From the IMG/VR virus record IMGVR_UViG_3300049855_000348, positions 124,001-188,000 of that record: a stretch of 64,000 nt of DNA; one strand, given 5' to 3'. The notes below the pieces were generated by a model. That model was not told the origin of the DNA and ran no database searches. It saw only the letters and a program-made list of their open reading frames with translations. The position numbers and the translations under genes were made by a program. Every line of letters starts with the position of its first letter. The first letter of the stretch is position 1. Below are positions 15,847 to 45,343 of this stretch, in pieces.

Positions 15847-17406
15847 TCAGAGCGAACCGCCGAAGATCGTTCCACCGACACCGCCACTGCTGAACAGGTT
15901 GCGGACGTTGAGGGTGGCGTAGTAATACTGGCCATCCTCGACGAGGTGCTTGGCGTAGCGGCTGAGCATCGCCTTGCGCGGGGTGAAGTCCTCGGGATCG
16001 AGGATCGCATCGGTCATCAGGACCGGCACGTACGGCGCGTGGATGTACGCCGCTTCCAGTTGGCTCTGCGGCTTGCGACCGATGAGGATCTTGTTCCGTG
16101 GGAACGAGGTCATCACGAAGACCGTGTAGCGGTCTTCCAGGGTGCCGGCCTTGTAGACGGCAGCATCCGAAGGAGCGATGCTTCCAGCGCCCTTCCAGGT
16201 GTTGACGTTGGCGAAGCGGGCAGCGATTTCCGGGCCGGTGACGATGAAGTTCGCCGGGCCACGGTTGGTGAAGCGGTGGATCTGAGCAGCGACATCGTTG
16301 ATGCCGTGGATCAGAGCGATGTTGCGGTCCTTGAAGTTGCCGCTGACACCACCGACGACGCCGGTACCACTGGTCGCGTAGTCGAACTCGAAGCGCAGAC
16401 CAGCGATGCGGAGCAGATCGTTGATACCTTCACGGTTCACGTTCTGCGCCATCAGGTTGGTCATGATGCCGGTGAGTTCTTCTTCGAGATCGATGTCATG
16501 GTACGCACGGAAGTCCATCTCGGCCTCGGGGGTCCAGATGGTCTTCAGCTTGCGGGTCTTGGCCTTCAGCATTTCGCTGTCCATGCCGACTTCGACTTCA
16601 GGAATCGACGAGTTCTTTTCCAGGTCGAAGCAGTAGTCGATGGCAGCGATCAGCGTGGTGGTCGCACCGACGGTGTAACCGGTCAGCCATGCAGCCGACG
16701 CGGTGATGGTCAGTTGGCTCGAACCGTTCAGGCCGACAGTCGGCTGGACGGACAGGGTGAGGCCGGTCAGTTCGTTGTAGACGATGCTGAACGTGCCGCC
16801 CTTGGATTCGACGACCGCCTTGACGGTGTTCGTGTCCTGGTCGATCAGGCTGATGCGAACCGGGGTGAACGTGCCGGGCAGGGCTGCCGGGCTGGCCAGC
16901 GAGGTGAAGTTCAACGCCAGGGTGTTGATGTTGGCGTTGGTGATCGTCGAGCCGGAAAGCTCGTACTGGATCGATTCACTGTCGTAGTATTGATCCGCGT
17001 TCCACAGGTTGAACTGGGGAGCCGCGAAGCCCTTGGGACGACCGAGTTCGATCGCGCTGTTGACACCCGCACGGAGGCGGTTCTGGGTCAGGCGCTGACG
17101 GAGGTAGAACACCAAGCCGGTCGGCTGGGGGATCGCCTGCACGTTGCAGATATCCGGGAGGATGATCTGTTCGCCCCATGCCTTGCGGATGGTCGGCAGA
17201 GCGGTGCGGGTGAACGCAGCGATGTTGCCGGAGACGGTGTCTTCGTTGATGTTGCGGACTTCGTTGTCCAGGAGGCGGGCGCAGAGACGGGTGCGGCTGG
17301 AGTCGAGACCTTCGCAGAGTCCCGCCCACTGTTCGGTGAGGGTTTCGACTTCGCGCTTGTCGCTTTCCAGATAGTCCGAAATTTCGGCTTCAGAGAGGCG
17401 TGGCAT
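15847..17406 (-). CDS. gp23: Major capsid protein, T4 gp23-like
   Basis: gp23-type motifs VQAIPQPTGLVFYLR, AKTRKLKTIWTPEAEMD, EINREGI-like NVNREGINDL, APYVP and PRKAMLSRY; last gene of the head module; strong SD (AAGGAAA). Confidence 0.95.
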   Translation of the reverse strand: MPRLSEAEISDYLESDKREVETLTEQWAGLCEGLDSSRTRLCARLLDNEVRNINEDTVSGNIAAFTRTALPTIRKAWGEQIILPDICNVQAIPQPTGLVFYLRQRLTQNRLRAGVNSAIELGRPKGFAAPQFNLWNADQYYDSESIQYELSGSTITNANINTLALNFTSLASPAALPGTFTPVRISLIDQDTNTVKAVVESKGGTFSIVYNELTGLTLSVQPTVGLNGSSQLTITASAAWLTGYTVGATTTLIAAIDYCFDLEKNSSIPEVEVGMDSEMLKAKTRKLKTIWTPEAEMDFRAYHDIDLEEELTGIMTNLMAQNVNREGINDLLRIAGLRFEFDYATSGTGVVGGVSGNFKDRNIALIHGINDVAAQIHRFTNRGPANFIVTGPEIAARFANVNTWKGAGSIAPSDAAVYKAGTLEDRYTVFVMTSFPRNKILIGRKPQSQLEAAYIHAPYVPVLMTDAILDPEDFTPRKAMLSRYAKHLVEDGQYYYATLNVRNLFSSGGVGGTIFGGSL

Positions 17407-17546: not shown

Positions 17547-17552
17547 TATGTA
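17547..17552 (-). promoter_or_regulatory. Candidate late promoter TACATA for the capsid gene (leader about 140 nt)
   Basis: Same hexamer as upstream of 18396, 30974, 38020 and 41777; lies between the upstream terminator and the capsid gene. Confidence 0.5.
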
Positions 17553-17646: not shown

Positions 17647-18396
17647 TTACTTCTTGATGCCGGCCAGACGGCGCATGCGTTCCATCTGGGGGCTGAAGCC
17701 CTTCTGGGTGCCCTGTTCGCCCTCGGCGATGACCTTCTCACCCTTGCCGGTGGAGTCGAGGTGTTCCTCGTTGGCGGACGTGCCCTTGGTCGGGGCGGTC
17801 TCTTCGACGGTGACCTGGAGGCTGGTTTCCAGGCTCTCGCGGAGTTCCTTGACCGTGCCTTCGGCGACGTTGGCACGGGCGGTCTGCTCCAGGACCTTCT
17901 TCTTCTCGCCCTTGATCTGCTCTTCGAGGGCGGCGACCTTGGTCTTGAGGTCCGTGACTTCCTTCGGATCGACCTTGGCACCTTCGGTGATCTCGGCCTT
18001 GCCCTTGGTGATCAGCTTCTCGACCTCTTCGAGGAGAGCCGAGCCGCGCTTGGCTTCGGTCTGCTCGGCGATGCGGGCGAGACGGTCACCATGGCTGTCG
18101 ATGGCGGAGACCAGGAGACCCTTCACGCGCTCGGCGAGAAGTTTCTCGTACTTGGTCAGTTCCTCCTTGATCGTCTTGTCGCCAGCTTCCTTGGCTTCTT
18201 CCAGCTTCTCCAGGTAGGAGGCTTCGAGCTTGATCTTCTCGGCCTTGACGGCTTCGGTGATCGCACCCTTCTTGCTGGCTTCGGCTTCGGCGACGGTCTT
18301 GGTGTAGAACGCCTCCAGCGACTCGACCACCTTGGTCGACTCGTCGGCACCGATGGTCTCGGTCAGGAGCTTCTTGAGATCGGCTGGGACGGGCAT
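17647..18396 (-). CDS. Prohead core/scaffold protein, gp22-like
   Basis: Charged coiled-coil protein between the protease and capsid genes (T4 order 21-22-23); many [LIV]xE motifs; TACATA and an AGAAGGA SD upstream. Confidence 0.75.
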   Translation of the reverse strand: MPVPADLKKLLTETIGADESTKVVESLEAFYTKTVAEAEASKKGAITEAVKAEKIKLEASYLEKLEEAKEAGDKTIKEELTKYEKLLAERVKGLLVSAIDSHGDRLARIAEQTEAKRGSALLEEVEKLITKGKAEITEGAKVDPKEVTDLKTKVAALEEQIKGEKKKVLEQTARANVAEGTVKELRESLETSLQVTVEETAPTKGTSANEEHLDSTGKGEKVIAEGEQGTQKGFSPQMERMRRLAGIKK

Positions 18397-18427
18397 GGGC
18401 TATTCCTTCTCGTGTTTATGTACGAGG

Positions 18428-19111
18428 TTACTTGATACCCAGCCAGCGATCGACGAGCGATGCCAAACCGAGCTTCTGAGTGGATGGGCGGGCTTTGGTG
18501 AACTCGCAGAACTCACGGATCAGTTGCTCACTGACCACTGAGGGGCGGGCACCTGGGGTGCTGGGGTCATGGACCAGATCGTAGGTCTTCATCGAGTAGT
18601 CTTCACCCACCATGGTGTCACCACCCTTGGTGAAGAGACTGCCGGCACCACGACTGGAAGTTCCGACCTTGCCACCCAGGGCATCGCAGCAGCCGATGGC
18701 AGCCGGGCCGAGGGGCAGTGACGGGATGAGCGTCATGCGTCCTTCGGTGATGCCGCTGGAGTTCATGTGCAGACGGTCGATCCGCAGACAGGTCTTCTGC
18801 ATGTTGATGTTGACCGTCTCGGGGTGATCGAGTTCCCCGAGGATGCCGCCGTTCTCTTTGATGATCTGCTGGAGCTTCTTGGTCTCACGCTCCAGGATGT
18901 GGAGCGGGTAGATGCGACCGTTCTTGTTGCGGGTGTTGGCCCGCTGGAACAGACCTTCGAGGACACGGGTGCCGCCCTCGCCGGCCTTCATCTCGCCCTC
19001 GAACAGGAAGGCTGCATGGCTTTCGCTGATGAGACCACGACGTGCTTCAAGAACGTCGTTCTCGTACGGCTTGACCTGCACCCATCCCTGTGATTCGAGG
19101 AGCGTCTTCAT
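18428..19111 (-). CDS. gp21: Prohead core protease, T4 gp21-like
   Basis: Motifs NKNGRIYP, GELDHP, SSRGAGSL and YDLVHDPSTPGA of gp21/S77 proteases. Confidence 0.95.
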   Translation of the reverse strand: MKTLLESQGWVQVKPYENDVLEARRGLISESHAAFLFEGEMKAGEGGTRVLEGLFQRANTRNKNGRIYPLHILERETKKLQQIIKENGGILGELDHPETVNINMQKTCLRIDRLHMNSSGITEGRMTLIPSLPLGPAAIGCCDALGGKVGTSSRGAGSLFTKGGDTMVGEDYSMKTYDLVHDPSTPGARPSVVSEQLIREFCEFTKARPSTQKLGLASLVDRWLGIK

Positions 19112-30987: not shown

Positions 30988-32292
30988 TTATGTAGCGGCC
31001 TGGGAATCCGAGATCAGGTCTGCCAGCTTGGTCTTGATGAACTTGTTCGCCTCGACCAGGAAAGCATCCCACAGGGCACCACGGCCAGTATGGCGATCGG
31101 TCGGGACATTCTCGTCGTTGAGGTGCAGGGCGTAGAGGTCACCAGGGACACCCTCCTCCTCCAGGTGTCTGCGAACCCACTGCATCACTGCATCTTCGGT
31201 CACATCACCCTTGATTTCCTCCAGCGAGTGGATGGCTTGGGTGATCGGGTCGTGATTGGCGTCGGCGAAGAGATAACGACCGACCTGACCACGTACCCAG
31301 GCCGACAGGTAATTCAGGTCGCGGTAGTCTTCCAAGTGCTCACGGCTGTTGGCACCGTATTCCTCGATCGTGTCGGCGATCTCCTTGTCTACGTCGGCTG
31401 CCCGGCGATAGAGTTTGGCGACAACGTCCCTGTAGGCATCCCGCGTAACCGCTGTGCTGTCCGAGACTTTGCCCTGCTTGTCGAGTTTGCGAATGTCGAA
31501 ATCGTCGAAACGTCGAATGGCGTGTCGAAAGAAACGCTCGTAGTCCTTCTCGGTCGGCTGGTCACCGGCCTGGGCCAGGAAGTTGTTCAGGATCTGGCTG
31601 AAGGCTGGGTCCTGTTCAGCCGACTTGGCCATGCCTGCCACGACCTTCTCAGGTGCCTCCAGACGGCCACGGAAGAGCAACGGCAGGCTGTCGGTACCCA
31701 GCTTGTGGGCGATGCTCTGGACCTGCGCATGGCTCTCCCAGCGACCGGCCATCTTCAGCGCCTGTTCCTCGATCTCACCAGGGTCAGTGAGTAGGTCAGA
31801 GAGACCGGTTTCGGGCACCTCATACTTCACGCCGACCACGACCATCCTGGCCTTGGCATCGTCCTTGTGCAGGCGCGTTTCCGGGTTGCGGGTACCGATC
31901 TCCACCACGATCAGGGTACCAGGATCGACAGCATCGAGCTTGCCGGACTTGGTACGCTGGATGATCTGTTCAATCGGCTTGCGCAGATCCTTCTGGGTGA
32001 AGCCAATGGAGAAGCCGACGTTATCGTCATCGAGATGGTTGAGATCGACCTCGTAGCGACCAGACCAGAAGCGCCAGCAGTCCTCGGGATTGTTGGCGGT
32101 GTCCTTCTCCTTCGTGCGGTAGCACTTCAGCAAGGCACCACTGGAATGGGCAACGATCTCGACTTCCTGAGCGTGTAGGTAGCGGACCAGATCCTCACCG
32201 CCGTTGTGCTCGATGAAGTCTGACAGTGCCTTGAAGCGGGGCTCCATGGCTTGGGCGATGTCTTCACAGAGAATGCGTTTGTGGTGGATCAT
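30988..32292 (-). CDS. Hypothetical protein (434 aa)
   Basis: ATGA overlap with the upstream gene; typical codon usage. Confidence 0.8.
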   Translation of the reverse strand: MIHHKRILCEDIAQAMEPRFKALSDFIEHNGGEDLVRYLHAQEVEIVAHSSGALLKCYRTKEKDTANNPEDCWRFWSGRYEVDLNHLDDDNVGFSIGFTQKDLRKPIEQIIQRTKSGKLDAVDPGTLIVVEIGTRNPETRLHKDDAKARMVVVGVKYEVPETGLSDLLTDPGEIEEQALKMAGRWESHAQVQSIAHKLGTDSLPLLFRGRLEAPEKVVAGMAKSAEQDPAFSQILNNFLAQAGDQPTEKDYERFFRHAIRRFDDFDIRKLDKQGKVSDSTAVTRDAYRDVVAKLYRRAADVDKEIADTIEEYGANSREHLEDYRDLNYLSAWVRGQVGRYLFADANHDPITQAIHSLEEIKGDVTEDAVMQWVRRHLEEEGVPGDLYALHLNDENVPTDRHTGRGALWDAFLVEANKFIKTKLADLISDSQAAT

Positions 32293-34975: not shown

Positions 34976-36427
34976 ATGTTGACCTTCTCCTACTCGAACG
35001 CTTGGACAGCCACCTACCAGGGTGACGTTCGGGGCGTCGCGTGGCTGAAGCGTCTGTTCACCTACACCGACATGGCAGACACCCGGCACAAGCAGCGGCT
35101 GGGTTATTTTCCCTCCTACTGCACGCTCGACACCGATGGGTGCCGGATGTCCCACGGGCAGGTGATCCACGCTGTACGGCACGCCAAAGCCGACGGCATC
35201 CCCATCACGATCAATGACCCCAGTTGCCGGTATCTGGTCGAATCTGGTCCTATCCCGCCAGATTACCTTCCGGAGATCACCGGGTACGACTACCAACTTT
35301 TGTCAGCCCAGATCGCCCTGGGCAGCGGGCACGGGCTGGTGGTGATCGCCACCGGTGGTGGCAAGACCGTCGTGATCGGGATGGTGCTCAAAGCTCTGGC
35401 CACCATGACCAACGTTCAGGGTATCCTGATCCTGATCTACTCGAAGGACCTGCTGAACCAAACCGCCAAGCGGATGGAGAAGTACGGTGTCCCAAGTGAC
35501 GACATCGGTGTCATCCACTCCGACATCCCACCAGCCAAGCAGGCTATCGCAGCCACGAAGCGCATCGTGCTCGCCACCCACACCTCCATCGCCAAGTACC
35601 ATGGGGTGATCGAACGGACGCAATACGTGCTGGTCGATGAGGGTCACCGGGCGGTCGGCCCACTTTACTCCGCCCTGTTCGGCAAGCTGCCCAACCTCGT
35701 GAACATCCTCGGCTTCACCGCCACACCATGGGACAACGAAGCTGAGCGGATGAAGATGCTGGCGATCTATGGCCAGATCCTGGTGAACATCCCGGTGCGC
35801 TTCCTCATCGATCGCGGTGTGTTGATGAATCCCGAGGTCTACTTCATCAAGCTCTACTACAAAGACCGCGACATCAAACTGTGCAATCAGATGGAATGGC
35901 GTGAAGCCAAGACTCAGTTCATTCTTGAAGACCGTAACCGCAATCTGCTACCGATCGTTGCTCTGAAGAAGTTCGGTGGTCGCATGCTCGTCATCTATGA
36001 CGATCTCGACCATGGCGAGCATCTACAACAACTTTACATCGAGCAAGGTTTCGAGACTCGTCTCGCTGAAGGAAAGACTTCCACTAAGAATCGTGCGAAT
36101 GCCATCGAATGGTTCGAGCAAGACTGCGAGCCTGGACAGTGGGGCAAGGTTCTGCTCGCCTCGAAGGTATTCGATGAGGGTGTCGACATCAAAGGCGGCT
36201 GCGACATTTTCTTCGCCATCGGTGCCGGAAAAGATGTCAGCAAAGTTGCACAGCGACTCGGTCGTGCTCTACGAAAAAACCGCAGCGGTAAACTGCGGTG
36301 TTTCGACTGCCAGGACAGCAATCATCCAATCCTGTCGCGGTGGTCATCCACTCGTCGTGGGGCGATCGAGGATCTGAAGATTCCGGTGAAGACGATCAGC
36401 CTGGAAGAGTTTGCGGTTCTGACTTGA
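34976..36427 (+). CDS. uvsW: SF2 DNA helicase, UvsW-like (true start 34976, not 32957)
   Basis: IATGGGKT (motif I), VDEGH (II), GFTATP (III), VFDEGVDI (V) and QRLGRALR (VI). The upstream part of the tracked ORF is the antisense shadow of minus-strand genes. Confidence 0.9.
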   Translation: MLTFSYSNAWTATYQGDVRGVAWLKRLFTYTDMADTRHKQRLGYFPSYCTLDTDGCRMSHGQVIHAVRHAKADGIPITINDPSCRYLVESGPIPPDYLPEITGYDYQLLSAQIALGSGHGLVVIATGGGKTVVIGMVLKALATMTNVQGILILIYSKDLLNQTAKRMEKYGVPSDDIGVIHSDIPPAKQAIAATKRIVLATHTSIAKYHGVIERTQYVLVDEGHRAVGPLYSALFGKLPNLVNILGFTATPWDNEAERMKMLAIYGQILVNIPVRFLIDRGVLMNPEVYFIKLYYKDRDIKLCNQMEWREAKTQFILEDRNRNLLPIVALKKFGGRMLVIYDDLDHGEHLQQLYIEQGFETRLAEGKTSTKNRANAIEWFEQDCEPGQWGKVLLASKVFDEGVDIKGGCDIFFAIGAGKDVSKVAQRLGRALRKNRSGKLRCFDCQDSNHPILSRWSSTRRGAIEDLKIPVKTISLEEFAVLT

Positions 36428-36785
36428 CCAGGAGTTGTTCGACTTTTTTGGCGAACGCTTCCAGCATGTTTTCCACGCCAGAGGTCATGTTCAACCTCGT
36501 CTGCTCTTGGCAGTAGCTGGGCACGTGATCGAACCAGTGCCAGTTCCACTTTCCTGAGTAGGGATTGAGATGGCCTCCACAGTCGTGTGTGGGGAGATGC
36601 TTGATTGCGGCTGGGATATCCTCGAAATGGCAGGCCAGCCAGTCATCCATGGGCCGGACACGAAGAGGGCCAGCCACCGTGTTGATCCGGAACTCTTTGT
36701 TCCAATCGCACGGTACTTCCTCCAGGTGAAGACGATCCTTCAGCTTGAGCAGGCCGGCGAGCACTTCTTTGGTCAGGTCGATCAT
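36396..36785 (-). CDS. Hypothetical protein (129 aa, MIDLTKEVLAG...)
   Basis: ATGA overlap with the upstream gene fixes the start at 36785; overlaps the uvsW end convergently by 32 nt. Confidence 0.7.
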   Translation of the reverse strand: MIDLTKEVLAGLLKLKDRLHLEEVPCDWNKEFRINTVAGPLRVRPMDDWLACHFEDIPAAIKHLPTHDCGGHLNPYSGKWNWHWFDHVPSYCQEQTRLNMTSGVENMLEAFAKKVEQLLVKSEPQTLPG

Positions 36786-37069
36786 GTGATGACTCCGTTC
36801 GTGAGATTCAGTTCTCCGACGTAGAGGTAGTTGTGCCCCTGGCTGATGGATGGGTCTGGGTAGTGGGCCGGTGGTTCGGCGAAGGTACACCCATCACCGA
36901 ACTTCAACAGCTTCAGATGTCCGAGCGTCTTGCTACCAAGATCGTGGTTTTGGTAAGCCGCCCACCGTCCACCACGTTCACGTACCGTTGTCAGTGCCTG
37001 TGGATGGATACACTTCCCCTCAGCATTTTCATTCTCGGGGTCGATGAGTTTGGCGACAGTGGTGGTCAT
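36782..37069 (-). CDS. Hypothetical protein (95 aa, MTTTVAKLID...)
   Basis: SD GAGGAA before the ATG at 37069. Confidence 0.7.
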   Translation of the reverse strand: MTTTVAKLIDPENENAEGKCIHPQALTTVRERGGRWAAYQNHDLGSKTLGHLKLLKFGDGCTFAEPPAHYPDPSISQGHNYLYVGELNLTNGVIT

Positions 37070-37094
37070 GTGATTCCTCGGGTTGATTGGTGTT

Positions 37095-37286
37095 TCAGCG
37101 TGAGATGTAGAAGCCAGCGCGATCCTTGCCGACGAGATCTTCGAGTTCTTTGTGAGCTTTGATGGCTGCCTGCTCAGCCTCAGCGAAAGCCAGCGCAGCA
37201 GCATGCCGCTTCTCACTGGCTGCTTTGGCAGCAGCACCGAGGGTGCGAGCGAGAGCATCGAAATCGGCAGCGGGTTTCTGACTCAT
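37095..37286 (-). CDS. Small helical hypothetical protein (63 aa, MSQKPAADF...)
   Basis: ATGA overlap with the upstream gene. Confidence 0.65.
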   Translation of the reverse strand: MSQKPAADFDALARTLGAAAKAASEKRHAAALAFAEAEQAAIKAHKELEDLVGKDRAGFYISR

Positions 37287-37564
37287 ACCATGACCTCCGT
37301 CTTGTGGGTGCTGTATTGTGGGCTGAAGATCGTCAGAGCCTTTACGACGCCATTCCATTCTTTCTTGATGATTTCCTCCGCCTCTGCGAGCACAGCGTTC
37401 ATCTCGGCACCGTAGCGGATCCACGCCTGCTTTCTGCCGTTGATGGTGAACGTGATGAGGTATGGCTTCAGACCATTGACCTCTCCCAGCTTGAAGAAGG
37501 ACGCCTTGGTGTATTCCACCCAGGCACCTTCGTATTCGGCGGTCTTTTTGTCTTCGTTGTTCAT
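37283..37564 (-). CDS. Hypothetical early protein (93 aa, MNNEDKK...), apparently leaderless
   Basis: ATG lies 6 nt after the -10 hexamer TATACT. Confidence 0.75.
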   Translation of the reverse strand: MNNEDKKTAEYEGAWVEYTKASFFKLGEVNGLKPYLITFTINGRKQAWIRYGAEMNAVLAEAEEIIKKEWNGVVKALTIFSPQYSTHKTEVMV

Positions 37565-37570
37565 GTCCAC

Positions 37571-37598
37571 AGTATAGCGACTAAAAGGTCGCTGTCAA
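37571..37598 (-). promoter_or_regulatory. Sigma70-type promoter TTGACA-16-TATACT with a perfect GCGAC-N6-GTCGC palindrome as its spacer
   Basis: Minus strand TTGACA GCGAC CTTTTA GTCGC TATACT gtggac ATG. Confidence 0.9.
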
Positions 37599-37602
37599 CA
37601 CC

Positions 37603-37686
37603 CTATCCGAACAGCGCCTTGAGGCGGAACAGGAAGCTCGGCTTCGTGACGGGGTAGCGGCCAGCGGAGTTTGAGGTGTTACGCAC
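37603..37686 (-). CDS. Possible micro-protein (27 aa, MRNTSNSAGRYPVTKPSFLFRLKALFG), not in ORF track
   Basis: GTG start with AGGA 7 nt upstream; codons typical of this genome; fills an intergenic gap. Confidence 0.4.
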   Translation of the reverse strand: MRNTSNSAGRYPVTKPSFLFRLKALFG

Positions 37687-37737
37687 GGTGTGTTCCTACT
37701 AGGGGGAGGCGTTCTGTTTTCTAGAAAATAGAATGGG

Positions 37738-37950
37738 TTAGCGACCACGTGGGGATGGTTCGCCGTCCTTCTGGACGTAGGGGGCGATCTTCACACCCGG
37801 ATTCCAACGTTTCGCAAACGCCGCCTTGTTTCTCTCCCAATGGGCAAGAGCAGCCTCTTCACCCCGTTCGCTTGCGAGGTATTCGTAGATCAAGCCATCG
37901 CTGACGTTGACGTAGAGGTGGACGAGAGGGAGTTCGGCGGTGGTGCTCAT
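37738..37950 (-). CDS. Hypothetical early protein (70 aa), apparently leaderless
   Basis: ATG 6 nt after a perfect TATAAT. Confidence 0.75.
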   Translation of the reverse strand: MSTTAELPLVHLYVNVSDGLIYEYLASERGEEAALAHWERNKAAFAKRWNPGVKIAPYVQKDGEPSPRGR

Positions 37951-37956
37951 GCCCAG

Positions 37957-37984
37957 ATTATAGCGACACTTTAGTCTAAGTCAA
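37957..37984 (-). promoter_or_regulatory. Sigma70-type promoter TTGACT-16-TATAAT with a TAGAC-N6-GTCGC spacer
   Basis: Minus strand TTGACT TAGAC TAAAGT GTCGC TATAAT ctgggc ATG. Confidence 0.9.
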
Positions 37985-38019
37985 CACCTTCCTCAACACC
38001 GGTCATGGCTACATAAGCC

Positions 38020-38196
38020 ATGAACCTCAAGCCCCTCGTCGAAGATACCTGTTCCGGCAACGTGGCTGCATTTACCCGGGCTCGCATTGGTGGCGGGGAT
38101 GACAAGGTCGTCCGCAAGCCTGTAGAAAAGAAGAAGGGTACCGGACTCAAGCCCGGTACCCTCTTCGACTTCGTCAACGGCTACAAGAAACGCTAG
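38020..38196 (+). CDS. 58-aa protein carrying a copy of the predicted mature capsid N-terminus (LVE|DTCSGNVAAFTR), not in ORF track
   Basis: MNLKPLVEDTCSGNVAAFTRARIGGGDDKVVRKPVEKKKGTGLKPGTLFDFVNGYKKR; gcTACATA-agcc-ATG upstream; 11/13 identity to capsid residues 55-67. Confidence 0.8.
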   Translation: MNLKPLVEDTCSGNVAAFTRARIGGGDDKVVRKPVEKKKGTGLKPGTLFDFVNGYKKR

Positions 38197-39569
38197 CCGG
38201 CAAGCTGACCGGTTGCCTTGAGCAATCCGTTCAGCAGATCTTCAGCCGAGGCCGAGGCACCTGCCGGGGGTGGATTGCTGACCGGTGGAGCCTGCTGGAC
38301 CGACGATTGAGCCACGACCGGGGGCACAACAGGGTTCGTCGATACCGAGGGCGGTACGGGCATCCCAGCGTCACTGCGGATGGCAGCCTTGATGTCAGAG
38401 ACCTTCTCCAGGTCCTCCAACTTGGGCATGCTCACCCGGGTTGATGGCAGGGTAGCAGGAGCCGAGTGCAGGGGCGGCGGCACATGCTGGTGGCTGGTGG
38501 TGGGCTCGGCTGGCTTGAAGACCACAACCGGTTCCTGAGGCTGTGCGGTCGGACCATTGATCGGCACCCCACCCTCCTTGAACAAGCTCTGCTGGCCTTT
38601 GCTGGCGTTCTCCTTGGCGATCACGGCGTCAGACTCGGCGATGAGCGCCTTGTATGCCTTCTCAGCGTCGGTGATGTTCTTGGCCCCGGTGACGGTCTCG
38701 ATCTGCTCCGGAGTGAACATGCTACGGCTGTTCAACTCGTCGACCATCTTTTTGAGATCGGCGTCGATCTGTTCCTTGGTGCGACGACCACGCTGAACCG
38801 TTCCAGAGATCGGCGGCTTGCTGCTACCAACACCAGTCAGGATCTGCTTGGTATCGGTGGTGACACCGGCTGTCTGAGCGGGTGATCCGAGGCTGGGCGG
38901 GGTGGCCGGCTGACCGTTGTTGCTGAAGGGGAGCGATGTCACCTCGTAGATGTCCGGCACTTCAATGTCGATCCAGTCGACCGCATCCATCATCATCTCC
39001 ATCGCCCAGTCGGTCGAATAGAGAGGGAAACTACCAAGCTGACGAGCCGCGATCTCCGCTTCGGCCAGGATGACACCGAACACATAGCGATCAGGAACCT
39101 GACCAGCACCGCCGATGGTGCCGAGTTTGATGAGACGACCGGCGATATCGGCATCGTAGTCCTTCACCACACGGTTTTTCACGTCGGTGCCGGAGAGTTC
39201 CAGCGTCGCAAAAGTGGCGGTTACCAGACCAAACGAGCAATCCCACTTCACGCGGGCATTGAGTGATGCCATCAGACGCTGTTGGTCACTGACCATCAGG
39301 CAACCTTTGTCGTTGCCCTCAAGTTTGTTCTTCAGGTACCAACCCCAGACCTCGTTCGAGTTGATGTTCTGGACTCGACTGGTGTTGTCCAAGCTGATGA
39401 TGTTCTTCTCAGCATCGAACTTGAAATTCTTGTGGTTGGCCTGGATCGCCTTGAGCAGGTACTTCACCGGCACGCCGATGACACGCGCCATCTCGAAGGC
39501 GGTGAACTTCGGCAAGACATCCTTGCTGAGCTTGATCGACTCGACGATGGATTCACGAGTGATTTTCAT
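38193..39569 (-). CDS. Hypothetical protein (458 aa): possible N-terminal HTH-like segment and a Pro-rich C-terminal tail
   Basis: ATGA overlap; TAFEMARVIGVPVKYLLKAI looks helix-turn-helix-like (weak). Confidence 0.75.
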   Translation of the reverse strand: MKITRESIVESIKLSKDVLPKFTAFEMARVIGVPVKYLLKAIQANHKNFKFDAEKNIISLDNTSRVQNINSNEVWGWYLKNKLEGNDKGCLMVSDQQRLMASLNARVKWDCSFGLVTATFATLELSGTDVKNRVVKDYDADIAGRLIKLGTIGGAGQVPDRYVFGVILAEAEIAARQLGSFPLYSTDWAMEMMMDAVDWIDIEVPDIYEVTSLPFSNNGQPATPPSLGSPAQTAGVTTDTKQILTGVGSSKPPISGTVQRGRRTKEQIDADLKKMVDELNSRSMFTPEQIETVTGAKNITDAEKAYKALIAESDAVIAKENASKGQQSLFKEGGVPINGPTAQPQEPVVVFKPAEPTTSHQHVPPPLHSAPATLPSTRVSMPKLEDLEKVSDIKAAIRSDAGMPVPPSVSTNPVVPPVVAQSSVQQAPPVSNPPPAGASASAEDLLNGLLKATGQLAG

Positions 39570-40363
39570 GAGTCGGCTCCCTTATGAGCGAGTTGTTGAC
39601 CGGTGATGGTGATCGTGCCGGAAGTGGTGACGATGTGGACATAGCCGCTGTCGGCTTCCACCTCGATGTCGAGCACGACACCACCACGACACTTGCTGTC
39701 TGGTGTGGTATCGAGTCGACCGAAGAGCTTGGAAGAGAGTTCGGTGTGAAGCTGTTGGAAAGGACGTTCCAGACCGTTGGCCTGAATCAGTGTCTTGGCC
39801 GTCGAATAGGTCGCTTCGTTCTGTGCCAGCGCATAGGCAGCTTCCAGCATCGACTGGAGTTTCTTGTGATCGGTGCGCGGCGGCTTGACGGTGATATTCA
39901 CTGGTCTTTGCGGGGCTGCGATGGTTGGAGCCGGAGCACCAGGAGCGACAGCAGGGGCGCTAGTCGCTGGGCGTGTTGGATCTACCGGGCGCAGATGCTT
40001 TCCAGCCGCAAGGGTTGACGGAGCGACCGCAGCCACGGTGACACCAGACTCACTGATGGGTGAACCGAGCGGAATCGGGCCATTCTCTTCGTGCGGTCGA
40101 GGAACAGCACCTCCAGCACCCATGATCTCAGGAACCGAACCTTCTTCACTGTCGAGATTGATCGCCTTTTTCGGATCGAACGACACGCTCTTGTTCATCT
40201 GAGTTGGTGTCTTCTTCTCATTGAGGACAGTGACGATCTCGGTGTCGTTCAGTTGTCCGAACAGAGCGGCGGTCCATCCGAGAGATTTCACCTTGTGCCA
40301 GATAACACCCTTGGCGATCATGTTCCCTTTGTATGGAATCAGTTCATCGTGATCAAAAGCCAT
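39566..40363 (-). CDS. Hypothetical protein (265 aa, MAFDHDEL...)
   Basis: ATG at 40363 lies 7 nt after the resolvase stop; the longer tracked start overlaps the resolvase. Confidence 0.7.
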   Translation of the reverse strand: MAFDHDELIPYKGNMIAKGVIWHKVKSLGWTAALFGQLNDTEIVTVLNEKKTPTQMNKSVSFDPKKAINLDSEEGSVPEIMGAGGAVPRPHEENGPIPLGSPISESGVTVAAVAPSTLAAGKHLRPVDPTRPATSAPAVAPGAPAPTIAAPQRPVNITVKPPRTDHKKLQSMLEAAYALAQNEATYSTAKTLIQANGLERPFQQLHTELSSKLFGRLDTTPDSKCRGGVVLDIEVEADSGYVHIVTTSGTITITGQQLAHKGADS

Positions 40364-40370
40364 GGTTTCT

Positions 40371-41015
40371 TTACCTGTAAATGGTGATTTTAGCGGCAAC
40401 ATCAAGATCGTCCTTACGAACGCCCAAAGTGCCAGGAATGGGTTTCGCATAGGCAACCAGTGATATCCGTCCTAAGACATAGGCGTCAGCGATATTGTTG
40501 TCGCTGGATTCAAAAGTCCAGCGTTTGTAGACCCCGAGCATCACTTGGTCCTTCTCACACGTCCCTTTGCCGGTGGCGAACTTCTTCAGTCCATTGGTGC
40601 CACAGCAGGCGAAGTGCCAGTCGGTCCTGCTCATCATGATTCTGAAGTGCCAGCCCAGACCACCGAGCTTGGCCATCTGATGAGCTTGAGAGAAGGCGAA
40701 GTCTTCCATCACCGCACAGACCTTGCGACCAGCAGCGATCTCGGTGACAAACTTGTAGGTCTCACTGAACAAAGTGACGATGCGGTGGACTTCATCCATC
40801 GGCGTCGAGCCGGCCTTGGTAGAGATCAGTTTCTGGCCAAGCAATGTGCCCTGGTCGTCAAAGATACAGACGCCAGTGCCGGTCATCGACTGGTCGATGC
40901 CAACATAGACCCCACCCTTCACCCAGGGAGAGACTTGCACGCATGCGGGTACGAGGTTCTTTTTCTTAGCCACTGACACCCTTCCGTCGCGCCCATCGAC
41001 GTTCGTGTTCGACAT
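40371..41015 (-). CDS. ruvC: RuvC-like Holliday junction resolvase (start 41015 or GTG 40973)
   Basis: VGIDQSMTGTG, VMEDFAF, LKKFATGKG...KDQV and NIADAYVL: RuvC acidic catalytic residues. Confidence 0.85.
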   Translation of the reverse strand: MSNTNVDGRDGRVSVAKKKNLVPACVQVSPWVKGGVYVGIDQSMTGTGVCIFDDQGTLLGQKLISTKAGSTPMDEVHRIVTLFSETYKFVTEIAAGRKVCAVMEDFAFSQAHQMAKLGGLGWHFRIMMSRTDWHFACCGTNGLKKFATGKGTCEKDQVMLGVYKRWTFESSDNNIADAYVLGRISLVAYAKPIPGTLGVRKDDLDVAAKITIYR

Positions 41016-41777: not shown

Positions 41778-41845
41778 GGCGTGTTTCTCCACGCCTATGT
41801 AGCTGGACGCAGCGAAAATCAGAGTCAGGAGGGCCAGGGTCCTGA

Positions 41846-44800
41846 TCATACCGGTTTGATCGCCCAGGAGGTCTGCTCATCGACCATGGTGGCCACGATG
41901 GTACCAGCACGGCTGGAACCCGGCACATCGGCGTGGGTGATGACGAAGATCCGCTTCACCCGATTGACCATGGAAGCGATCAGATCCTGCACGGCACGGC
42001 GACCCTTCACGTCGAGGGCGTCGAAGACTTCGTCGAGGGCCAAGAAGCCGGCACGGTGCCGAGAACGCTGACGGGCCAACTCGAAGATCGAGAATAGCGC
42101 AGCCAGATCGGTCCACTTGCGCTGACCGCCTGAGCGCCGGCCATACCGTTCCTGGTAGGTCAGATCCGAGTTGAAGGTGAGGGTCATCTTCCCGCCGAAG
42201 TGTTGTCCGATGTAGGACTGGACGACGAGATTGAGTTGTTTCACGCTCTGGTCAAGCAGGAAACCCCTCATGGAGCCCTTAGCGGCAAAAGCCTTGTCCC
42301 AGAACGTGATGTAAGCCGATTTCAGGTCCAGGGCATGCGCCTGAGCCTTTGAGGTTTCCATCGCAGCGAACGCAGCCTGTCGGTCGGCGACCAAACGGTC
42401 CTTGGCGATCTTCAGAGCGGCAGCCGGGTCGGTGGCGGTGAGGTTGCGCTCCTCTTGAGCCAGGGCCGCCTCGGTAGCGGCTCCACCAGCCTCCAGGGCC
42501 GACTTTTCTTGCAGGAGGGCCGAGAGTTCCCCGGTGAGGCGTTTGTGCTCATCCTGAGCCTTCTGGAGGGCTTCTTTGGCCGAGACGAGATCCGTCACCG
42601 CCTGTGATGCCAGGATCAGATCGGCCTTGGTCCGGTAGGCACTCATGATGGCAAGTAGACCGTCGAGGATCCGCTGGAAGCCGGAGGCAGTGATGATGTC
42701 CTCCAGCCTCTCCGGCATGGGCAGGCACTGGTTGGCCTGTTCTGCGAATCGAGCATCGACCTGCTGCCGGCGTACGGCGATGGCCTGCAACCGAGCTTCC
42801 ATGTCCGGCAGGGACTTGGTCAGCGTTTCGAGCACGGTCTTGGCCGCAGCCAACTGGGCCAGGGTGGCGAGACCCTTGAGGGATTCATCAGCCTGAACTC
42901 GCAGTGCCTGGGCTTCGCTGATGAGTTTGGTCTGTTCGGCTTTGTAGGTCCGGTACCCTGCTCGCAGGCTCTCCAACTCAGCGTTGAGACCCTTCACCAC
43001 GTTGACCATCGATTCGCCATTGATCGAAGTCAGACACGTCGGGCAGTCACCACCAGTGGTGAGCTTTGAGAGCTTTTCAGCCTTCTGTGAGATCGGCGTT
43101 GCTTGCGTGGTGGTGGCCTCGGCCTTCGCACCTTCAGCCGCAGCCAACTGATCTTTCTGTGTTGCCTCTTGGCGGAGGACGTTGGCACGTTCATTGGCAG
43201 CAACCACTGCCGCTTCCTGTTTCAGTGCCGCTTCGAGACCAGTGATGCGATCACGAACAGTGCCGATCTCCGACTTGAGGATGTTCTCCTCGTTGGTGAT
43301 GTTGTTGTGATCGATGCAGCGGGAATTCCAAAGCGATTGAAAGCGAACGATGTTCTTGTTGGTCTCTTCCGCCTTGTCGACGTTGGCCTTCGCCTCGACA
43401 CGGATCGCCTCGACACCACCAGAGAGTAGTTGGACCTTCTCGGTCGCAGCCTTCACCACATCGTTGCTGTACTGAATAGTCTGCTCACCACTGGCTTCTG
43501 CATACATCAAACGTTCGCGTTCTTGACGCATCTTGACCTGATGGTCGTTCTTGCGCTGGGCCACTGAACTCAACATCACCTGATGATTCTTTTCAGCGTC
43601 GAGGATCTGCGTTTCGATGGCAGAGATCTGCGCTGCTGAGCGTTCGATTTCACCAGCACGAACCTTCTGAATGTTGGCCTGTTGTTCGAGTTGATCACTC
43701 ATGAGTTTCTTCAACTCACGAGTCTTCTCCAGGTAAGCGTCGAAGCGTTCGAGACCCAGCATCTCTTCGATCATGGCACGACGTTTCTTCTCGTCTCCGG
43801 TCATGAAGTTGGCCGTCACGTTTTGGCCCATGATGTAGGAACGACTGTAGGTCTCACGGTCGATGCCGATGAGATCGATGATCATCTTCTGGGTAGCTTT
43901 CGGATCACCCTTCTCGAATGACTCTTGATAGACGCCATCCTTGTAGACCTTCACACCAGTACCGCCGAGGTCGTGGTACTTGCGGAAGCGTTCGATGCTC
44001 CAGCCGTTGGCATGGTTCACCCGAACGTAGCAGTTCTTCCCCTTGCCGGTGAACTGAGGGTCGTAGACCACATCGTCAGCCTTCATCTCATCACGGATGG
44101 TCTCGCCGAAGTAGCACCAGAAGATAGCTTCGAGGAACGTGCTCTTGCCGGCACCGTTCTCACCTTCGAGGTACCACACGCCTGGACGCAGGTCATCAAA
44201 ATTGATGGTGATCTTTTCCTTCACACCAAGGAAGCCCTCAAGAGTCAGGCTGGAGACTTCACCATCGAAAGCCATGCCACCCTTTTCGGCATCTTGGAAA
44301 CGTGAATTCACCTCAGCGATGATCGATTTGCCGAACTGGATGGTGATGTCCACATCCAATTGACTATCGCCAGTGATGACCGACTTCACGAAGGGCTCGA
44401 CGAGGCCAGCGGCGGAGGTGGCTTCAACACCGAGGACTTCAACCTCCTGATCACGAATCGCTTTCTCGATGACCGACTCTTTGCGTACCGAGATGACACC
44501 GGCAGCTTCGAGCTTCAGTTGCAGGGCTTCGTGCTGCTCATCGGTGACGAGGTCGTCATAGATGACAGTGACGAAGCAGTCCTTGAGTGTGGTCAGATCC
44601 TGCGGCAGATCGCTGACACCGAGAACCTTGAAGGCATCGTGGTGTGGATTGAGGATGAACCGGTCGTTACCGGTATCCATGTCGAGGACCATGATACCAC
44701 GCTGGTCACCGGCATCGCCGAAATTGAACTGGAGGGGTGAGCCGCAATAGGTCACCCGGTGATCCATGCGCTGGAAGACGTGGAAGTGGCCAGAGTAGGT

Positions 44801-45337
44801 GGCCTTGAATGGGGCGAACACGTCGGGACCGACAGCACCAGAGAAGGTGGTCTTGTAGCGGGTGTTCTGTACCGCACCGTTGATGCCGAGGTGACCGAAC
44901 ACGGTCATCTTGGCGGCACGCTCGGGGAACTGCCGGGCGAAGTCCTGCACGAAGGCGACGATCTTCGACTGGTCTTCGTAGTAGGGGATGAACAGGAAAT
45001 GATCACCTACCGGGGTGATCTCACGGAAGACCTTGATCTTCGGATGCATATCCAGTCCGTCGAGACTGCTGACGGAGGTAGAATGCTTGAGGTTGAGATC
45101 GTGGTTGCCCAGGGTGAGGAACACCGGCCACTTGTCGGCGAGCTTGCGAAAGAAGTTGATGGCAGCCGACTGGCTGACCACATCGACCGCTTCACGGGTA
45201 ACCAGGGCATCACCCATGCAGACGACGGCCTGCACGCCTTGTCGTTGGAACTCTTCAATGATCCAGTCGCCGGTTTTGATGATGCGATCCAGCCCCTGTG
45301 GCTGGAAGTGGATGTCAGAGAAGATTCCAAGTTGCAT
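41846..45337 (-). CDS. Fused Mre11/SbcD (gp47-like) nuclease + Rad50/SbcC (gp46-like) ATPase in one ORF
   Basis: Metallophosphoesterase motifs SDIH, MGD, GNHD, GH and GHFH, then Walker A GENGAGKS, coiled coil with CPTC hook, signature SGGQ, Walker B LDEVFDALD and VITH; no intervening stop. Start 45337 or 45340. Confidence 0.93.
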   Translation of the reverse strand: MQLGIFSDIHFQPQGLDRIIKTGDWIIEEFQRQGVQAVVCMGDALVTREAVDVVSQSAAINFFRKLADKWPVFLTLGNHDLNLKHSTSVSSLDGLDMHPKIKVFREITPVGDHFLFIPYYEDQSKIVAFVQDFARQFPERAAKMTVFGHLGINGAVQNTRYKTTFSGAVGPDVFAPFKATYSGHFHVFQRMDHRVTYCGSPLQFNFGDAGDQRGIMVLDMDTGNDRFILNPHHDAFKVLGVSDLPQDLTTLKDCFVTVIYDDLVTDEQHEALQLKLEAAGVISVRKESVIEKAIRDQEVEVLGVEATSAAGLVEPFVKSVITGDSQLDVDITIQFGKSIIAEVNSRFQDAEKGGMAFDGEVSSLTLEGFLGVKEKITINFDDLRPGVWYLEGENGAGKSTFLEAIFWCYFGETIRDEMKADDVVYDPQFTGKGKNCYVRVNHANGWSIERFRKYHDLGGTGVKVYKDGVYQESFEKGDPKATQKMIIDLIGIDRETYSRSYIMGQNVTANFMTGDEKKRRAMIEEMLGLERFDAYLEKTRELKKLMSDQLEQQANIQKVRAGEIERSAAQISAIETQILDAEKNHQVMLSSVAQRKNDHQVKMRQERERLMYAEASGEQTIQYSNDVVKAATEKVQLLSGGVEAIRVEAKANVDKAEETNKNIVRFQSLWNSRCIDHNNITNEENILKSEIGTVRDRITGLEAALKQEAAVVAANERANVLRQEATQKDQLAAAEGAKAEATTTQATPISQKAEKLSKLTTGGDCPTCLTSINGESMVNVVKGLNAELESLRAGYRTYKAEQTKLISEAQALRVQADESLKGLATLAQLAAAKTVLETLTKSLPDMEARLQAIAVRRQQVDARFAEQANQCLPMPERLEDIITASGFQRILDGLLAIMSAYRTKADLILASQAVTDLVSAKEALQKAQDEHKRLTGELSALLQEKSALEAGGAATEAALAQEERNLTATDPAAALKIAKDRLVADRQAAFAAMETSKAQAHALDLKSAYITFWDKAFAAKGSMRGFLLDQSVKQLNLVVQSYIGQHFGGKMTLTFNSDLTYQERYGRRSGGQRKWTDLAALFSIFELARQRSRHRAGFLALDEVFDALDVKGRRAVQDLIASMVNRVKRIFVITHADVPGSSRAGTIVATMVDEQTSWAIKPV

Positions 45338-45343
45338 CATCTC

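What the first reader, a model, noticed from the sequence alone, without database searches (positions are those of the whole stretch)
38020..38196. 58-aa late protein that mimics the mature N-terminus of the major capsid protein
The micro-protein reads LVE|DTCSGNVAAFTR and the capsid protein reads INE|DTVSGNIAAFTR (residues 53-67, nt about 17206-17250): 11 of 13 residues are identical from the Glu. The codons differ synonymously (GAC/GAT, GCG/GCA, TTC/TTT, CGC/CGG), which implies selection on the peptide rather than a recent DNA copy. The gene lies 20 kb from the head module on the opposite strand and has the late motif gcTACATA-agcc-ATG. After the predicted gp21 cut it would expose the same N-arm as the capsid, followed by a Lys-rich tail. 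Inference: it occupies N-arm sites on the inner shell (for example at vertices or the portal) and tethers DNA, or acts as a decoy for host sensors that detect capsid protein, as CapRel-type systems do. It is missing from the ORF track.
Basis: partly seen in the sequence, partly recalled or inferred. Interest (0 to 1): 0.78.

Follow-up and report, generated by a model that had tools for sequence, protein, structure and literature searches.

The report
Mini-protein copied from capsid N-arm
An uncultured T4-like phage from freshwater sediment carries a conserved 58-residue gene whose first half is homologous to the capsid protein segment that spans the predicted maturation cut and the start of the N-arm. 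It is probably a small, protease-processed head component of a kind not described before.

Summary
ORF 38020-38196(+) encodes 58 aa, and E8-R20 matches capsid residues E55-R67 at 11 of 13 positions with synonymous codon differences. No shuffle of the capsid protein came close.

The ORF is a real gene. It has 17 metagenomic homologues of 54-65 aa, the close ones in the same genomic place, and dN/dS is 0.19-0.35.

Across all 18 members the only invariant residues besides Met1 are E8, T10, G13, F18 and T19. All five lie in the capsid-like motif and match the capsid.

The likeness is homology rather than a 13-residue mimic. A profile comparison aligns micro residues 3-34 with capsid residues 50-76 (97% probability, E 7e-11), crossing the predicted [LI]-x-E cut site.

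There is no co-variation. The capsid motif is invariant while the micro-protein drifts, reaching only 9 of 13 in one phage where both genes are on one contig.

The "Lys-rich tail" is co-encoded with an intrinsic terminator of the convergent gene.

A TACATA[AG] element shared with the scaffold and capsid genes precedes the ATG by 4 nt.

Most likely the protein is an internal-protein-like substrate of the S77 prohead protease. Cleavage, virion location, and the decoy or vertex roles are untested.

The parts
38020..38196 (+). Micro-protein gene, 58 aa, ATG start, TAG stop overlapping the stop of the convergent gene by 4 nt
   Evidence: There are 17 homologues of 54-65 aa. dN/dS is 0.19-0.35 and differences are biased to third codon positions.
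38010..38016 (+). TACATAA promoter-like element, 3 nt before the ATG (4 nt after the TACATA hexamer). No Shine-Dalgarno sequence, so the mRNA is probably leaderless.
   Evidence: Thirteen TACATA[AG] copies occur in the 220-kb genome, and the TACATA hexamer is depleted (18 found, about 63 expected by my estimate). Most copies lie upstream of ORFs, and five are 4-5 nt from an ATG. The element is conserved before the orthologous gene in L004, L005 and L011.
38020..38043 (+). Codons 1-8: short leader MNLKPLVE ending in L-x-E, the predicted prohead-protease site (cut after Glu8)
   Evidence: E8 is invariant and P3 is L/I (M once) in 18 members. This is the same architecture as the 10-residue propeptide of T4 gp24 (PMC7136217).
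38041..38079 (+). E8-R20: the 13-residue capsid-like motif
   Evidence: The family invariants E8, T10, G13, F18 and T19 all lie here and all match the capsid.
38026..38121 (+). Residues 3-34: the stretch homologous to capsid residues 50-76, with a 5-residue Gly-rich insertion
   Evidence: hhalign gives probability 97% and E 6.9e-11 over 27 columns. BLASTP of P0035 against the capsid gives 16 of 28 identical, E 2e-9.
38124..38163 (-). Intrinsic terminator of the convergent 458-aa gene, inside the micro-ORF. The 13-bp hairpin is at 38163-38134 and the U-tract at 38133-38124, which is the complement of the E-K-K-K codons.
   Evidence: Folding z-scores are -2.5 to -5.0 in five loci. Eight pairs show compensatory changes, and G.U pairs are valid only on the minus strand.
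38193..39569 (-). Convergent 458-aa gene of unknown function. Homologues of 266-461 aa stand in the same place in the close relatives.
37957..37984 (-). Sigma-70-like promoter TTGACT-N16-TATAAT, 6 nt before the ATG of the 70-aa gene (leaderless). It is one of 23 near-identical copies in the genome.
   Evidence: It appears as a repeated element in the assemblies.
37738..37950 (-). 70-aa gene upstream of the micro-ORF on the opposite strand (DUF7417-like in relatives)
15847..17406 (-). Major capsid protein, 519 aa, Gp23 family. It is the only Gp23-family gene in the genome.
17179..17259 (-). Capsid residues 50-76: the predicted cut site I-N-E55 followed by the start of the N-arm. This is the segment homologous to the micro-protein.
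   Evidence: The stretch is invariant in 20 capsid proteins of 67-93% identity over the first 100 residues.
17547..17552 (-). TACATA(G) element in the scaffold-capsid intergenic gap, 140 nt before the capsid ATG
18417..18422 (-). TACATA(A) element in the 31-nt gap before the scaffold gene, 20 nt before its ATG
17647..18396 (-). Putative scaffold protein (249 aa, acidic, many [LI]xE sites)
   Evidence: The assignment rests on its position between protease and capsid genes, as in T4.
18428..19111 (-). Prohead protease, Peptidase_S77 (T4 gp21 family)
   Evidence: E 1.1e-14
34976..36424 (+). DEAD/SNF2 helicase, 483 aa, on the same strand as the micro gene. In a distant relative the micro gene follows it directly.

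Best explanation
The ORF is a genuine small gene of a clade of uncultured T4-like phages.

Shown: its N-terminal half derives from the same sequence as the capsid protein segment that spans the predicted maturation cut ([LI]-x-E) and the first 20 or so residues of the mature N-arm. Its C-terminal half is an unrelated basic tail whose codons double as the terminator of the convergent gene.

Inferred:
- The gene is transcribed from its own TACATA[AG] element together with the scaffold and capsid genes, probably as a leaderless late mRNA.
- The disordered protein enters the assembling prohead by the contacts that the capsid protein's own N-terminal region makes with the core.
- The S77 prohead protease cuts it after Glu8. 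This leaves a basic peptide of about 50 residues with a capsid-like N-terminus.

In this reading it behaves like the T4 internal proteins or gp24, which have a short propeptide removed by gp21. The difference is that the conserved signal lies on the retained side of the cut and is borrowed from the capsid protein.
For: Real gene:
- 12 close and 5 distant homologues, all 54-65 aa.
- In every close relative whose contig was read (P0004, P0007, P0008, P0010), same place and orientation, with a 4-nt tail overlap with the convergent gene.
- dN/dS is 0.19-0.35, and third-position and synonymous changes occur inside the motif.

Homology to the capsid N-arm segment:
-.
- No shuffle of the capsid protein reached 10 of 13.
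- The only invariant residues of the 18-member family lie in the motif and equal the capsid residues.

Protease substrate:
- E8 is invariant and P3 is L/I/M.
- An S77 protease is encoded in the head module.
- 7 of 17 head-module genes carry [LI]xE with P1 at residue 6-13, against 23 of 260 elsewhere (p 8e-4, rough gene map).
- KVP20's annotated mature capsid protein starts after L-N-E62.
- T4 gp21 removes 65 residues from gp23 and 10 from gp24 (PMC7136217; PMC9546572).

Head association is plausible:
- In T4 the N-terminal region of gp23* lies inside the unexpanded head and probably contacts the core (PMC9546572).
- T4 internal proteins are diverse, and only their capsid-targeting sequence is conserved (PMC3012670).

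Co-regulation: TACATA[AG] lies before the scaffold, capsid and micro genes and is conserved in relatives.

Disorder: AlphaFold mean pLDDT is 57, with only a short C-terminal helix at 47-54.
Against: - Neither cleavage nor presence in virions has been observed. No cultured relative exists.
- The gene lies among replication and recombination genes, not in the head module.
- In T4 internal proteins the conserved targeting signal is the removed leader. Here the leader is variable and the retained part is conserved.
- There is no sequence similarity to any T4 internal-protein, Pfam or PHROG family.
- The 'late' status of TACATA[AG] rests only on its position before two head genes. The other genes it precedes are of unknown function.
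- Cleavage of the capsid protein at E55 is a prediction. In T4 and KVP20 the cut lies at a non-homologous, inserted position.
Confidence: 0.5

Rival explanations
1. Trans-acting N-arm. After cleavage the capsid-like N-terminus docks into lattice sites that normally receive a capsid N-arm, for example beside the portal or at vertices. The peptide then becomes a fixed minor shell component, and its basic tail faces the DNA.
For: - The retained, not the removed, side of the cut is the conserved part, and it equals the capsid residues.
- In T4 the N-terminal arms make extensive contacts within and between capsomers after expansion (PMC9546572; PMC9958956).
- The genome has only one Gp23-family gene and no gp24 paralogue.
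Against: - No structural test was possible. The single-chain models are of low confidence.
- Only about 20 residues of the arm are shared, and the rest of the arm is not (E 0.67).
- The micro-protein drifts at positions that are invariant in the capsid (V58, N61, I62).
- The Lys run is also explained by the terminator.
Confidence: 0.15
2. Assembly regulator that is not kept in the virion. The free N-arm segment competes with the capsid protein for the scaffold core or for the protease as a pseudo-substrate. This would tune the timing of cleavage or the head size, after which the protein is degraded or expelled.
For: - The homology spans both sides of the cut site, as a competing substrate would need.
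- T4 head-length mutations map to the gp23 N-terminus, which is thought to contact gp22 (PMC9546572).
- The scaffold protein is acidic and the tail is basic.
Against: There is no direct evidence. A regulator need not conserve the C-terminal [FY]-V-x-G-Y-K-K end, which shows synonymous variation and so protein-level selection.
Confidence: 0.15
3. DNA-metabolism accessory protein. The gene belongs with the adjacent helicase, SbcCD-like and RuvC-like genes, and its C-terminal basic and amphipathic end binds DNA or a replication protein. Under this reading the capsid likeness is an evolutionary leftover.
For: - In distant relatives the gene starts a few nt after a plus-strand gene: 3 nt after a DEAD/SNF2 helicase (L008, L009) and 7 nt after an unidentified 413-aa gene on P0033's contig.
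- In close relatives and in the window that helicase lies about 1-2 kb upstream on the same strand.
- A helix is predicted at residues 47-54 over L-x-x-F-V. From my memory only, this recalls clamp-binding tails such as the RB69 polymerase C-terminus.
Against: - It does not explain why the only invariant residues are those of the capsid motif and the cut site.
- The clamp-motif likeness was not tested.
- The window-clade gene has its own promoter-like element shared with head genes.
Confidence: 0.08
4. Decoy or inhibitor for a host sensor that recognises the capsid protein's N-terminal region. The small protein would soak up the sensor without triggering it.
For: The only support is the likeness itself and the general fact that capsid proteins and capsid peptides are sensed by defence systems. 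I know the examples (T4 Gol peptide with Lit, CapRel) from memory and did not test them here.
Against: - The T4 Gol-equivalent segment, by my own count of residues, starts just after the shared motif and is not shared.
- A literature search found no precedent.
- The motif is invariant in the capsid, so there is no sign of an arms race at this site.
- The host is unknown.
Confidence: 0.05
5. Not a functional protein. The open frame would be kept only because the DNA holds a promoter on one side and a terminator on the other.
For: The terminator covers codons 36-48, and a repeated promoter lies just upstream.
Against: - Codons 1-35 are free of both elements yet hold all the invariant residues.
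- Differences between relatives are mostly third-position and often synonymous in all three parts of the ORF.
- Frame, length and start are kept in loci saturated at synonymous sites.
Confidence: 0.04

Closest known systems
T4 internal proteins IPI, IPII, IPIII (capsid targeting sequence, cut by gp21)
   Same: They are small, basic, encoded away from the head module, carry a short N-terminal leader ending in [LI]-x-E, and are made for incorporation into the prohead core and processing (PMC3012670; PMC9546572).
   Different: There is no sequence similarity. In T4 the conserved element is the removed 10-residue leader. Here the leader varies and the conserved element is the retained N-terminus, which is homologous to the capsid protein.
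T4 gp24 vertex protein (gp23 paralogue with a 10-residue propeptide)
   Same: It is a paralogue of the major capsid protein with a very short leader removed by the prohead protease, which exposes an N-arm (PMC7136217; PMC9546572).
   Different: gp24 is a full HK97-fold protein. The micro-protein keeps only about 27 residues around the cut and has no capsid fold (no PF07068 hit). This genome has no gp24-like second copy.
SaPI1 CpmB, which mimics the C-terminus of the 80alpha scaffold protein (from my own knowledge, not checked here)
   Same: It is a small protein that reuses a short capsid-assembly interaction motif of a larger assembly protein.
   Different: CpmB is encoded by a parasite of the phage and copies the scaffold. 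Here the phage itself carries a copy of its own capsid N-arm segment.
T4 small prohead core proteins gp67 and gp68 and the internal peptides
   Same: They are small core components processed by gp21 (copy numbers in PMC9546572).
   Different: They are encoded inside the head module, and by my recollection they are acidic. No similarity was found in PHROGs.

Membership tests
Gp23 major capsid protein family (PF07068) | Match to the family profile / HK97-like capsid fold | tested here: not met
   There was no Pfam hit for the 58-aa protein at E 0.01 or below. The capsid gene itself matches at E 1.7e-53. AlphaFold predicts the micro-protein as disordered.
Gp23 major capsid protein family (PF07068) | Homology to at least part of the protein | tested here: met
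   hhalign of the micro family against the capsid N-termini gives probability 97%, E 6.9e-11, 27 columns, micro 3-34 = capsid 50-76. BLASTP gives E 2e-9. The C-terminal half is not similar (E 0.67).
Substrates of the T4-type prohead protease (Peptidase S77, gp21) | [LI]-x-E cleavage motif at a conserved position | tested here: met
   E8 is invariant. P3 is L or I in 17 members and M in 1 of 18.
Substrates of the T4-type prohead protease (Peptidase S77, gp21) | A cognate protease is encoded by the same phage | tested here: met
   Window 18428-19111(-) matches PF03420 at E 1.1e-14. Relatives carry it too.
Substrates of the T4-type prohead protease (Peptidase S77, gp21) | Cleavage observed in proheads | not testable with these tools
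   This needs proteomics or an in vitro assay. No cultured relative was found.
T4 internal proteins with capsid targeting sequence | Sequence similarity to the T4-type CTS or to an internal-protein family | tested here: not met
   Pfam and PHROGs gave no families. The only common feature is the terminal [LI]-x-E.
T4 internal proteins with capsid targeting sequence | Packaged in the head and ejected with the DNA | not testable with these tools
   No virion data exist.
T4 internal proteins with capsid targeting sequence | Same leader shared by several unrelated small proteins of one phage | tested here: inconclusive
   A second small basic protein (77 aa, genome 113312-113545) starts MDLYKALVE, and its one homologue keeps L-I-E. 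The hhalign match to the micro family is weak (probability 28%).
Rho-independent terminator (the element inside the ORF) | G+C-rich hairpin followed by a U-tract, downstream of a stop codon, conserved as structure | tested here: met
   The hairpin has 12-16 bp and a U-tract follows it. Eight pairs show double-sided changes, and the G.U pairs fit only the minus strand.
T4-type late promoter | Short A+T-rich -10-like element before late (head) genes, without a -35 element | tested here: inconclusive
   TACATA[AG] lies before the scaffold, capsid and micro genes and is conserved in relatives. The T4 consensus TATAAATA occurs only once in the genome. No transcription start data exist. The RNA-run contigs carry no strand information.

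The most novel reading that the evidence does not exclude
A phage encodes, as a separate late gene, a free copy of its capsid protein's cut site plus N-arm tip. After processing by the prohead protease, this peptide would act in trans at sites that recognise the capsid N-terminus. It could act as a lattice staple at symmetry-breaking positions, as a governor of scaffold-capsid contacts and head size, or as a blocker of a host sensor. That would be a new class of capsid-derived micro-protein.
Probability: 0.3. Interest if true: 0.8.

Novelty: new variant of a known kind. Interest (0 to 1): 0.62.

Why it matters
Small phage proteins are mostly unannotated, and this family has no name, no Pfam model and no cultured host.

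Its only invariant residues are those it shares with the capsid protein around the predicted maturation cut. That gives a concrete and testable handle on two questions. The first is how T4-type prohead proteases and cores recognise their substrates. The second is whether capsid N-arm contacts can be supplied or blocked in trans.

It is also a clear example of dual coding. A terminator hairpin and its U-tract are read on the other strand as G-x-G-L-K-P and a Lys run. This is a warning against reading function into such basic tails.

Tried and rejected
- DNA and tblastn searches of cultured phages with the region, the micro-protein and two distant members found nothing meaningful.
- IMG/VR and metagenome contig scans with the protein or its alignments gave no loci.
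- Pfam, PHROGs and the ESM Atlas gave no family. Rfam found nothing real in the region.
The distant micro-proteins lie on contigs of 1-2.4 kb without a capsid gene.
- MAFFT suggested that homology to the capsid extends over the whole micro-protein. I rejected this, because the C-terminal half scores E 0.67.
- I looked for similar N-arm copies in two other T4-like genomes. There were none in Microcystis phage Mel-JY01. The 595-kb uncultured phage LR756511 gave two weak hits on an R-I-Y-P-Q-L string that do not look like this gene.
- Structure prediction did not help. The micro-protein is disordered (pLDDT 57) and the capsid model is too poor to use (pLDDT 46).
- RNA evidence is inconclusive. 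A sediment metatranscriptome holds identical short contigs, including 38126-38276. They have no strand information, low depth, and DNA carry-over cannot be excluded.
- An antisense or RNA-level reason for the likeness is unlikely, since the two genes differ at synonymous sites.

Full report
**What the window is.** The window is bases 124001-188000 of a 220,489-bp IMG/VR virus record with direct terminal repeats. The DNA comes from a freshwater sediment metagenome. The record encodes a T4-type head module. It comprises a portal (PF07230), a prohead protease (Peptidase_S77, PF03420), an acidic scaffold-like protein, and a Gp23-family major capsid protein of 519 aa at 15847-17406(-). The capsid protein is only about 30% identical to the nearest deposited phage, so the phage has no cultured relative. 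Nearly all genes from 178 to about 52,300 lie on the minus strand.

**The observation.** The ORF at 38020-38196(+) is present and encodes 58 aa. Codon by codon, E8-R20 of the ORF matches E55-R67 of the capsid protein at 11 of 13 positions. In 25 shuffles of the capsid protein against the six-frame translation of the whole window, no 13-mer reached 10 identities. The real data have exactly one non-self window at 11 or more.

**It is a real gene.**
- A search of 5.8 billion proteins found 12 homologues of 57-65 aa at 63-90% identity.
- An exhaustive profile search added five distant members of 54-65 aa.
- In every close relative whose contig could be read, the gene sits in the same place. It is on the plus strand, between a small minus-strand gene and a minus-strand gene of 266-461 aa whose stop it overlaps by 4 nt.
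- Pairwise dN/dS among the three closest loci with DNA is 0.19-0.35, and differences fall mostly at third codon positions. This holds in the N-terminal 35 codons as well.

**The capsid-like motif is the core of the family, and the likeness is homology.**
- In the 18-member alignment the only invariant columns are M1, E8, T10, G13, F18 and T19. All but M1 lie in the motif and equal the capsid residues E55, T57, G60, F65 and T66.
- Profile-profile comparison of the family with 20 capsid N-termini aligns micro residues 3-34 with capsid residues 50-76. The probability is 97% and E is 6.9e-11 over 27 columns, with one 5-residue Gly-rich insertion.
- The distant member P0035 alone matches capsid residues 48-75 at 16 of 28 identities, E 2e-9.
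- The shared stretch therefore begins about 5-7 residues before the Glu and runs to the I-R-K of the N-arm.
- The C-terminal half shows no similarity to the capsid protein (E 0.67).

**No co-variation.** In 20 capsid proteins the stretch A-R-L-L-D-N-E-x-R-N-I-N-E-D-T-V-S-G-N-I-A-A-F-T-R-T-A-L-P is essentially invariant; these proteins are 67-93% identical over the first 100 residues compared. The micro-protein varies at C11, N14, V15 and elsewhere. One ENA contig of 43,347 bp carries both a micro-protein (P0007) and a capsid gene (P0016), and there the two share only 9 of 13. The window happens to hold the most capsid-like version in its clade. What is shared is a fixed core, E-x-T-x-x-G-x-x-x-x-F-T.

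**The cut site.**
- P1 Glu is invariant, and P3 is L or I in 17 members and M in one.
- The capsid protein has I-N-E at the aligned place. The two nearest short-type capsids in the phage collection have F-N-E and I-S-E there.
- KVP20's annotated mature capsid protein begins after L-N-E62.
- T4 gp21 removes 65 residues from gp23 and 10 from gp24 (PMC7136217).
- On a rough gene map, 7 of 17 head-module genes have [LI]-x-E with P1 at residue 6-13, against 23 of 260 elsewhere (Fisher p 8e-4). Short gp24-like or internal-protein-like leaders therefore seem common in this phage's head proteins, and the micro-protein has the same build.
- Cleavage itself, of either protein, is inferred and not shown. 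In T4 and KVP20 the cut lies in an inserted segment that this capsid lacks.

**Expression signals.**
- The hexamer TACATA occurs 18 times on both strands of the genome. My estimate from base composition is about 63 expected.
- The 13 copies followed by A or G mostly precede ORFs. One lies in the 31-nt gap before the scaffold gene. One lies in the scaffold-capsid gap. One ends 4 nt before the micro-ORF's ATG.
- Five copies are 4-5 nt from an ATG with no Shine-Dalgarno sequence, which suggests leaderless mRNAs.
- The element is conserved at orthologous places in relatives. It moves with a 183-aa gene that is inverted in one of them.
- This supports co-regulation with head genes. The word 'late' remains an inference, because the other genes that follow the element are of unknown function.

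**The Lys-rich tail is dual-coded.** On the minus strand, just after the stop of the convergent 458-aa gene, lie a 13-bp G+C-rich hairpin (38163-38134) and a U-tract. The U-tract is the complement of the E-K-K-K codons, and the hairpin arms are the G-T-G and P-G-T codons. The hairpin and U-tract are present in all five loci with DNA. Eight pairs are kept through changes on both sides, and the G.U pairs work only on the minus strand. So the conserved E-K-K-K-G-x-G-[LM]-K-P segment is at least partly a terminator read backwards. The last nine codons ([FY]-V-x-G-Y-K-K) still show synonymous variation, so the protein tail is also under selection.

**Structure.** AlphaFold predicts a disordered chain (mean pLDDT 57) with one short helix at residues 47-54. 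The capsid model was too poor to use.

**Interpretation.**
- In T4 the N-terminal region of cleaved gp23 lies inside the unexpanded head, probably on the scaffold core. It moves outward on expansion to form the N-arm and N-fist, which bind neighbouring subunits (PMC9546572; PMC9958956).
- T4 internal proteins are diverse, and only their targeting leader is conserved (PMC3012670).
- The most economical reading is that this micro-protein reuses the capsid protein's own cut-site-plus-arm segment to enter the prohead and be processed, giving a small basic head peptide.
- Two variants remain open: a fixed lattice 'staple' and a transient assembly regulator. Only experiment or multimer modelling can separate them.
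- A DNA-metabolism role is suggested by linkage to a helicase. In a distant relative the gene starts 3 nt after it. This does not explain the invariant residues.
- The decoy idea has no evidence either way.

**Novelty.** I found no annotated family, no cultured phage carrying the gene, and no paper describing a free-standing capsid N-arm gene. I rate it a new variant of a known kind, namely protease-processed small head proteins. There is a fair chance that it is something more unusual.

Noticed in passing
window 38124-38163 (-): The intrinsic terminator of the convergent 458-aa gene lies inside the micro-ORF. Its U-tract is read on the other strand as E-K-K-K and its hairpin as G-T-G-L-K-P-G-T. 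It is conserved with compensatory changes in five loci.
   Followed up: yes
window 37957-37984 (-) and 22 other places in the 220-kb genome (e.g. window 45371, 67910, 86665, 88964, 93441): There are 23 near-identical extended sigma-70-like promoters, TTGACTTAGAC-N7-GTCGCTATAMT. Most have an ATG 6 nt downstream (often ATGAGCA), which implies many leaderless early genes.
   Followed up: partly
window 17547-17552, 18417-18422, 30989-30994, 38010-38015, 41796-41801 and elsewhere in the genome: The TACATA[AG] element has 13 copies while the hexamer is depleted overall. It lies before the scaffold, capsid and several unknown genes, and five copies are 4-5 nt from an ATG. It is conserved in relatives and moves with an inverted gene. 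It is a candidate late promoter.
   Followed up: partly
genome 113312-113545 (+), i.e. 10.7 kb before the window start; locus L026:1813-2046: A second small basic protein of 77 aa starts MDLYKALVE, followed by a Gly-rich linker and V-K-K-P-V-P-A-K-K. This is the same kind of leader and basic patch as the micro-protein. Its one homologue keeps L-I-E.
   Followed up: partly
window 13641-34942 (-): Seven of 17 head-module genes begin with a 6-13-residue leader ending in [LI]-x-E, for example MLNAIFE, MRHLCNILE, MINSLRINE and MIHHKRILCE. This suggests many protease-processed head proteins.
   Followed up: partly
window 178-12162 (-): A single ORF of 3,994 aa lies next to the head module. I did not examine it.
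   Followed up: no
window 41846-45340 (-): A fused SbcD-SbcC (gp47/gp46-like) nuclease-ATPase is encoded in one 1,164-aa protein, and it is conserved as a fusion in relatives.
   Followed up: no
whole genome: There is only one Gp23-family gene and no detectable gp24-like vertex paralogue. The 653-aa gene after the capsid gene has no family match.
   Followed up: partly
L017:1498-1950 (-) and L016:1486-1728 (-) in LR756511: In a 595-kb uncultured phage, two unrelated ORFs carry the R-I-Y-P-Q-L string of that phage's own capsid N-arm (E 0.005 and 0.12). This is probably chance, but I did not resolve it.
   Followed up: partly
window 36500-40500: A sediment metatranscriptome run holds short contigs identical to this phage, including 38126-38276, 38503-38700 and 39440-39648. 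The phage therefore occurs in an independent sample. Strand is unknown and DNA carry-over cannot be excluded.
   Followed up: partly
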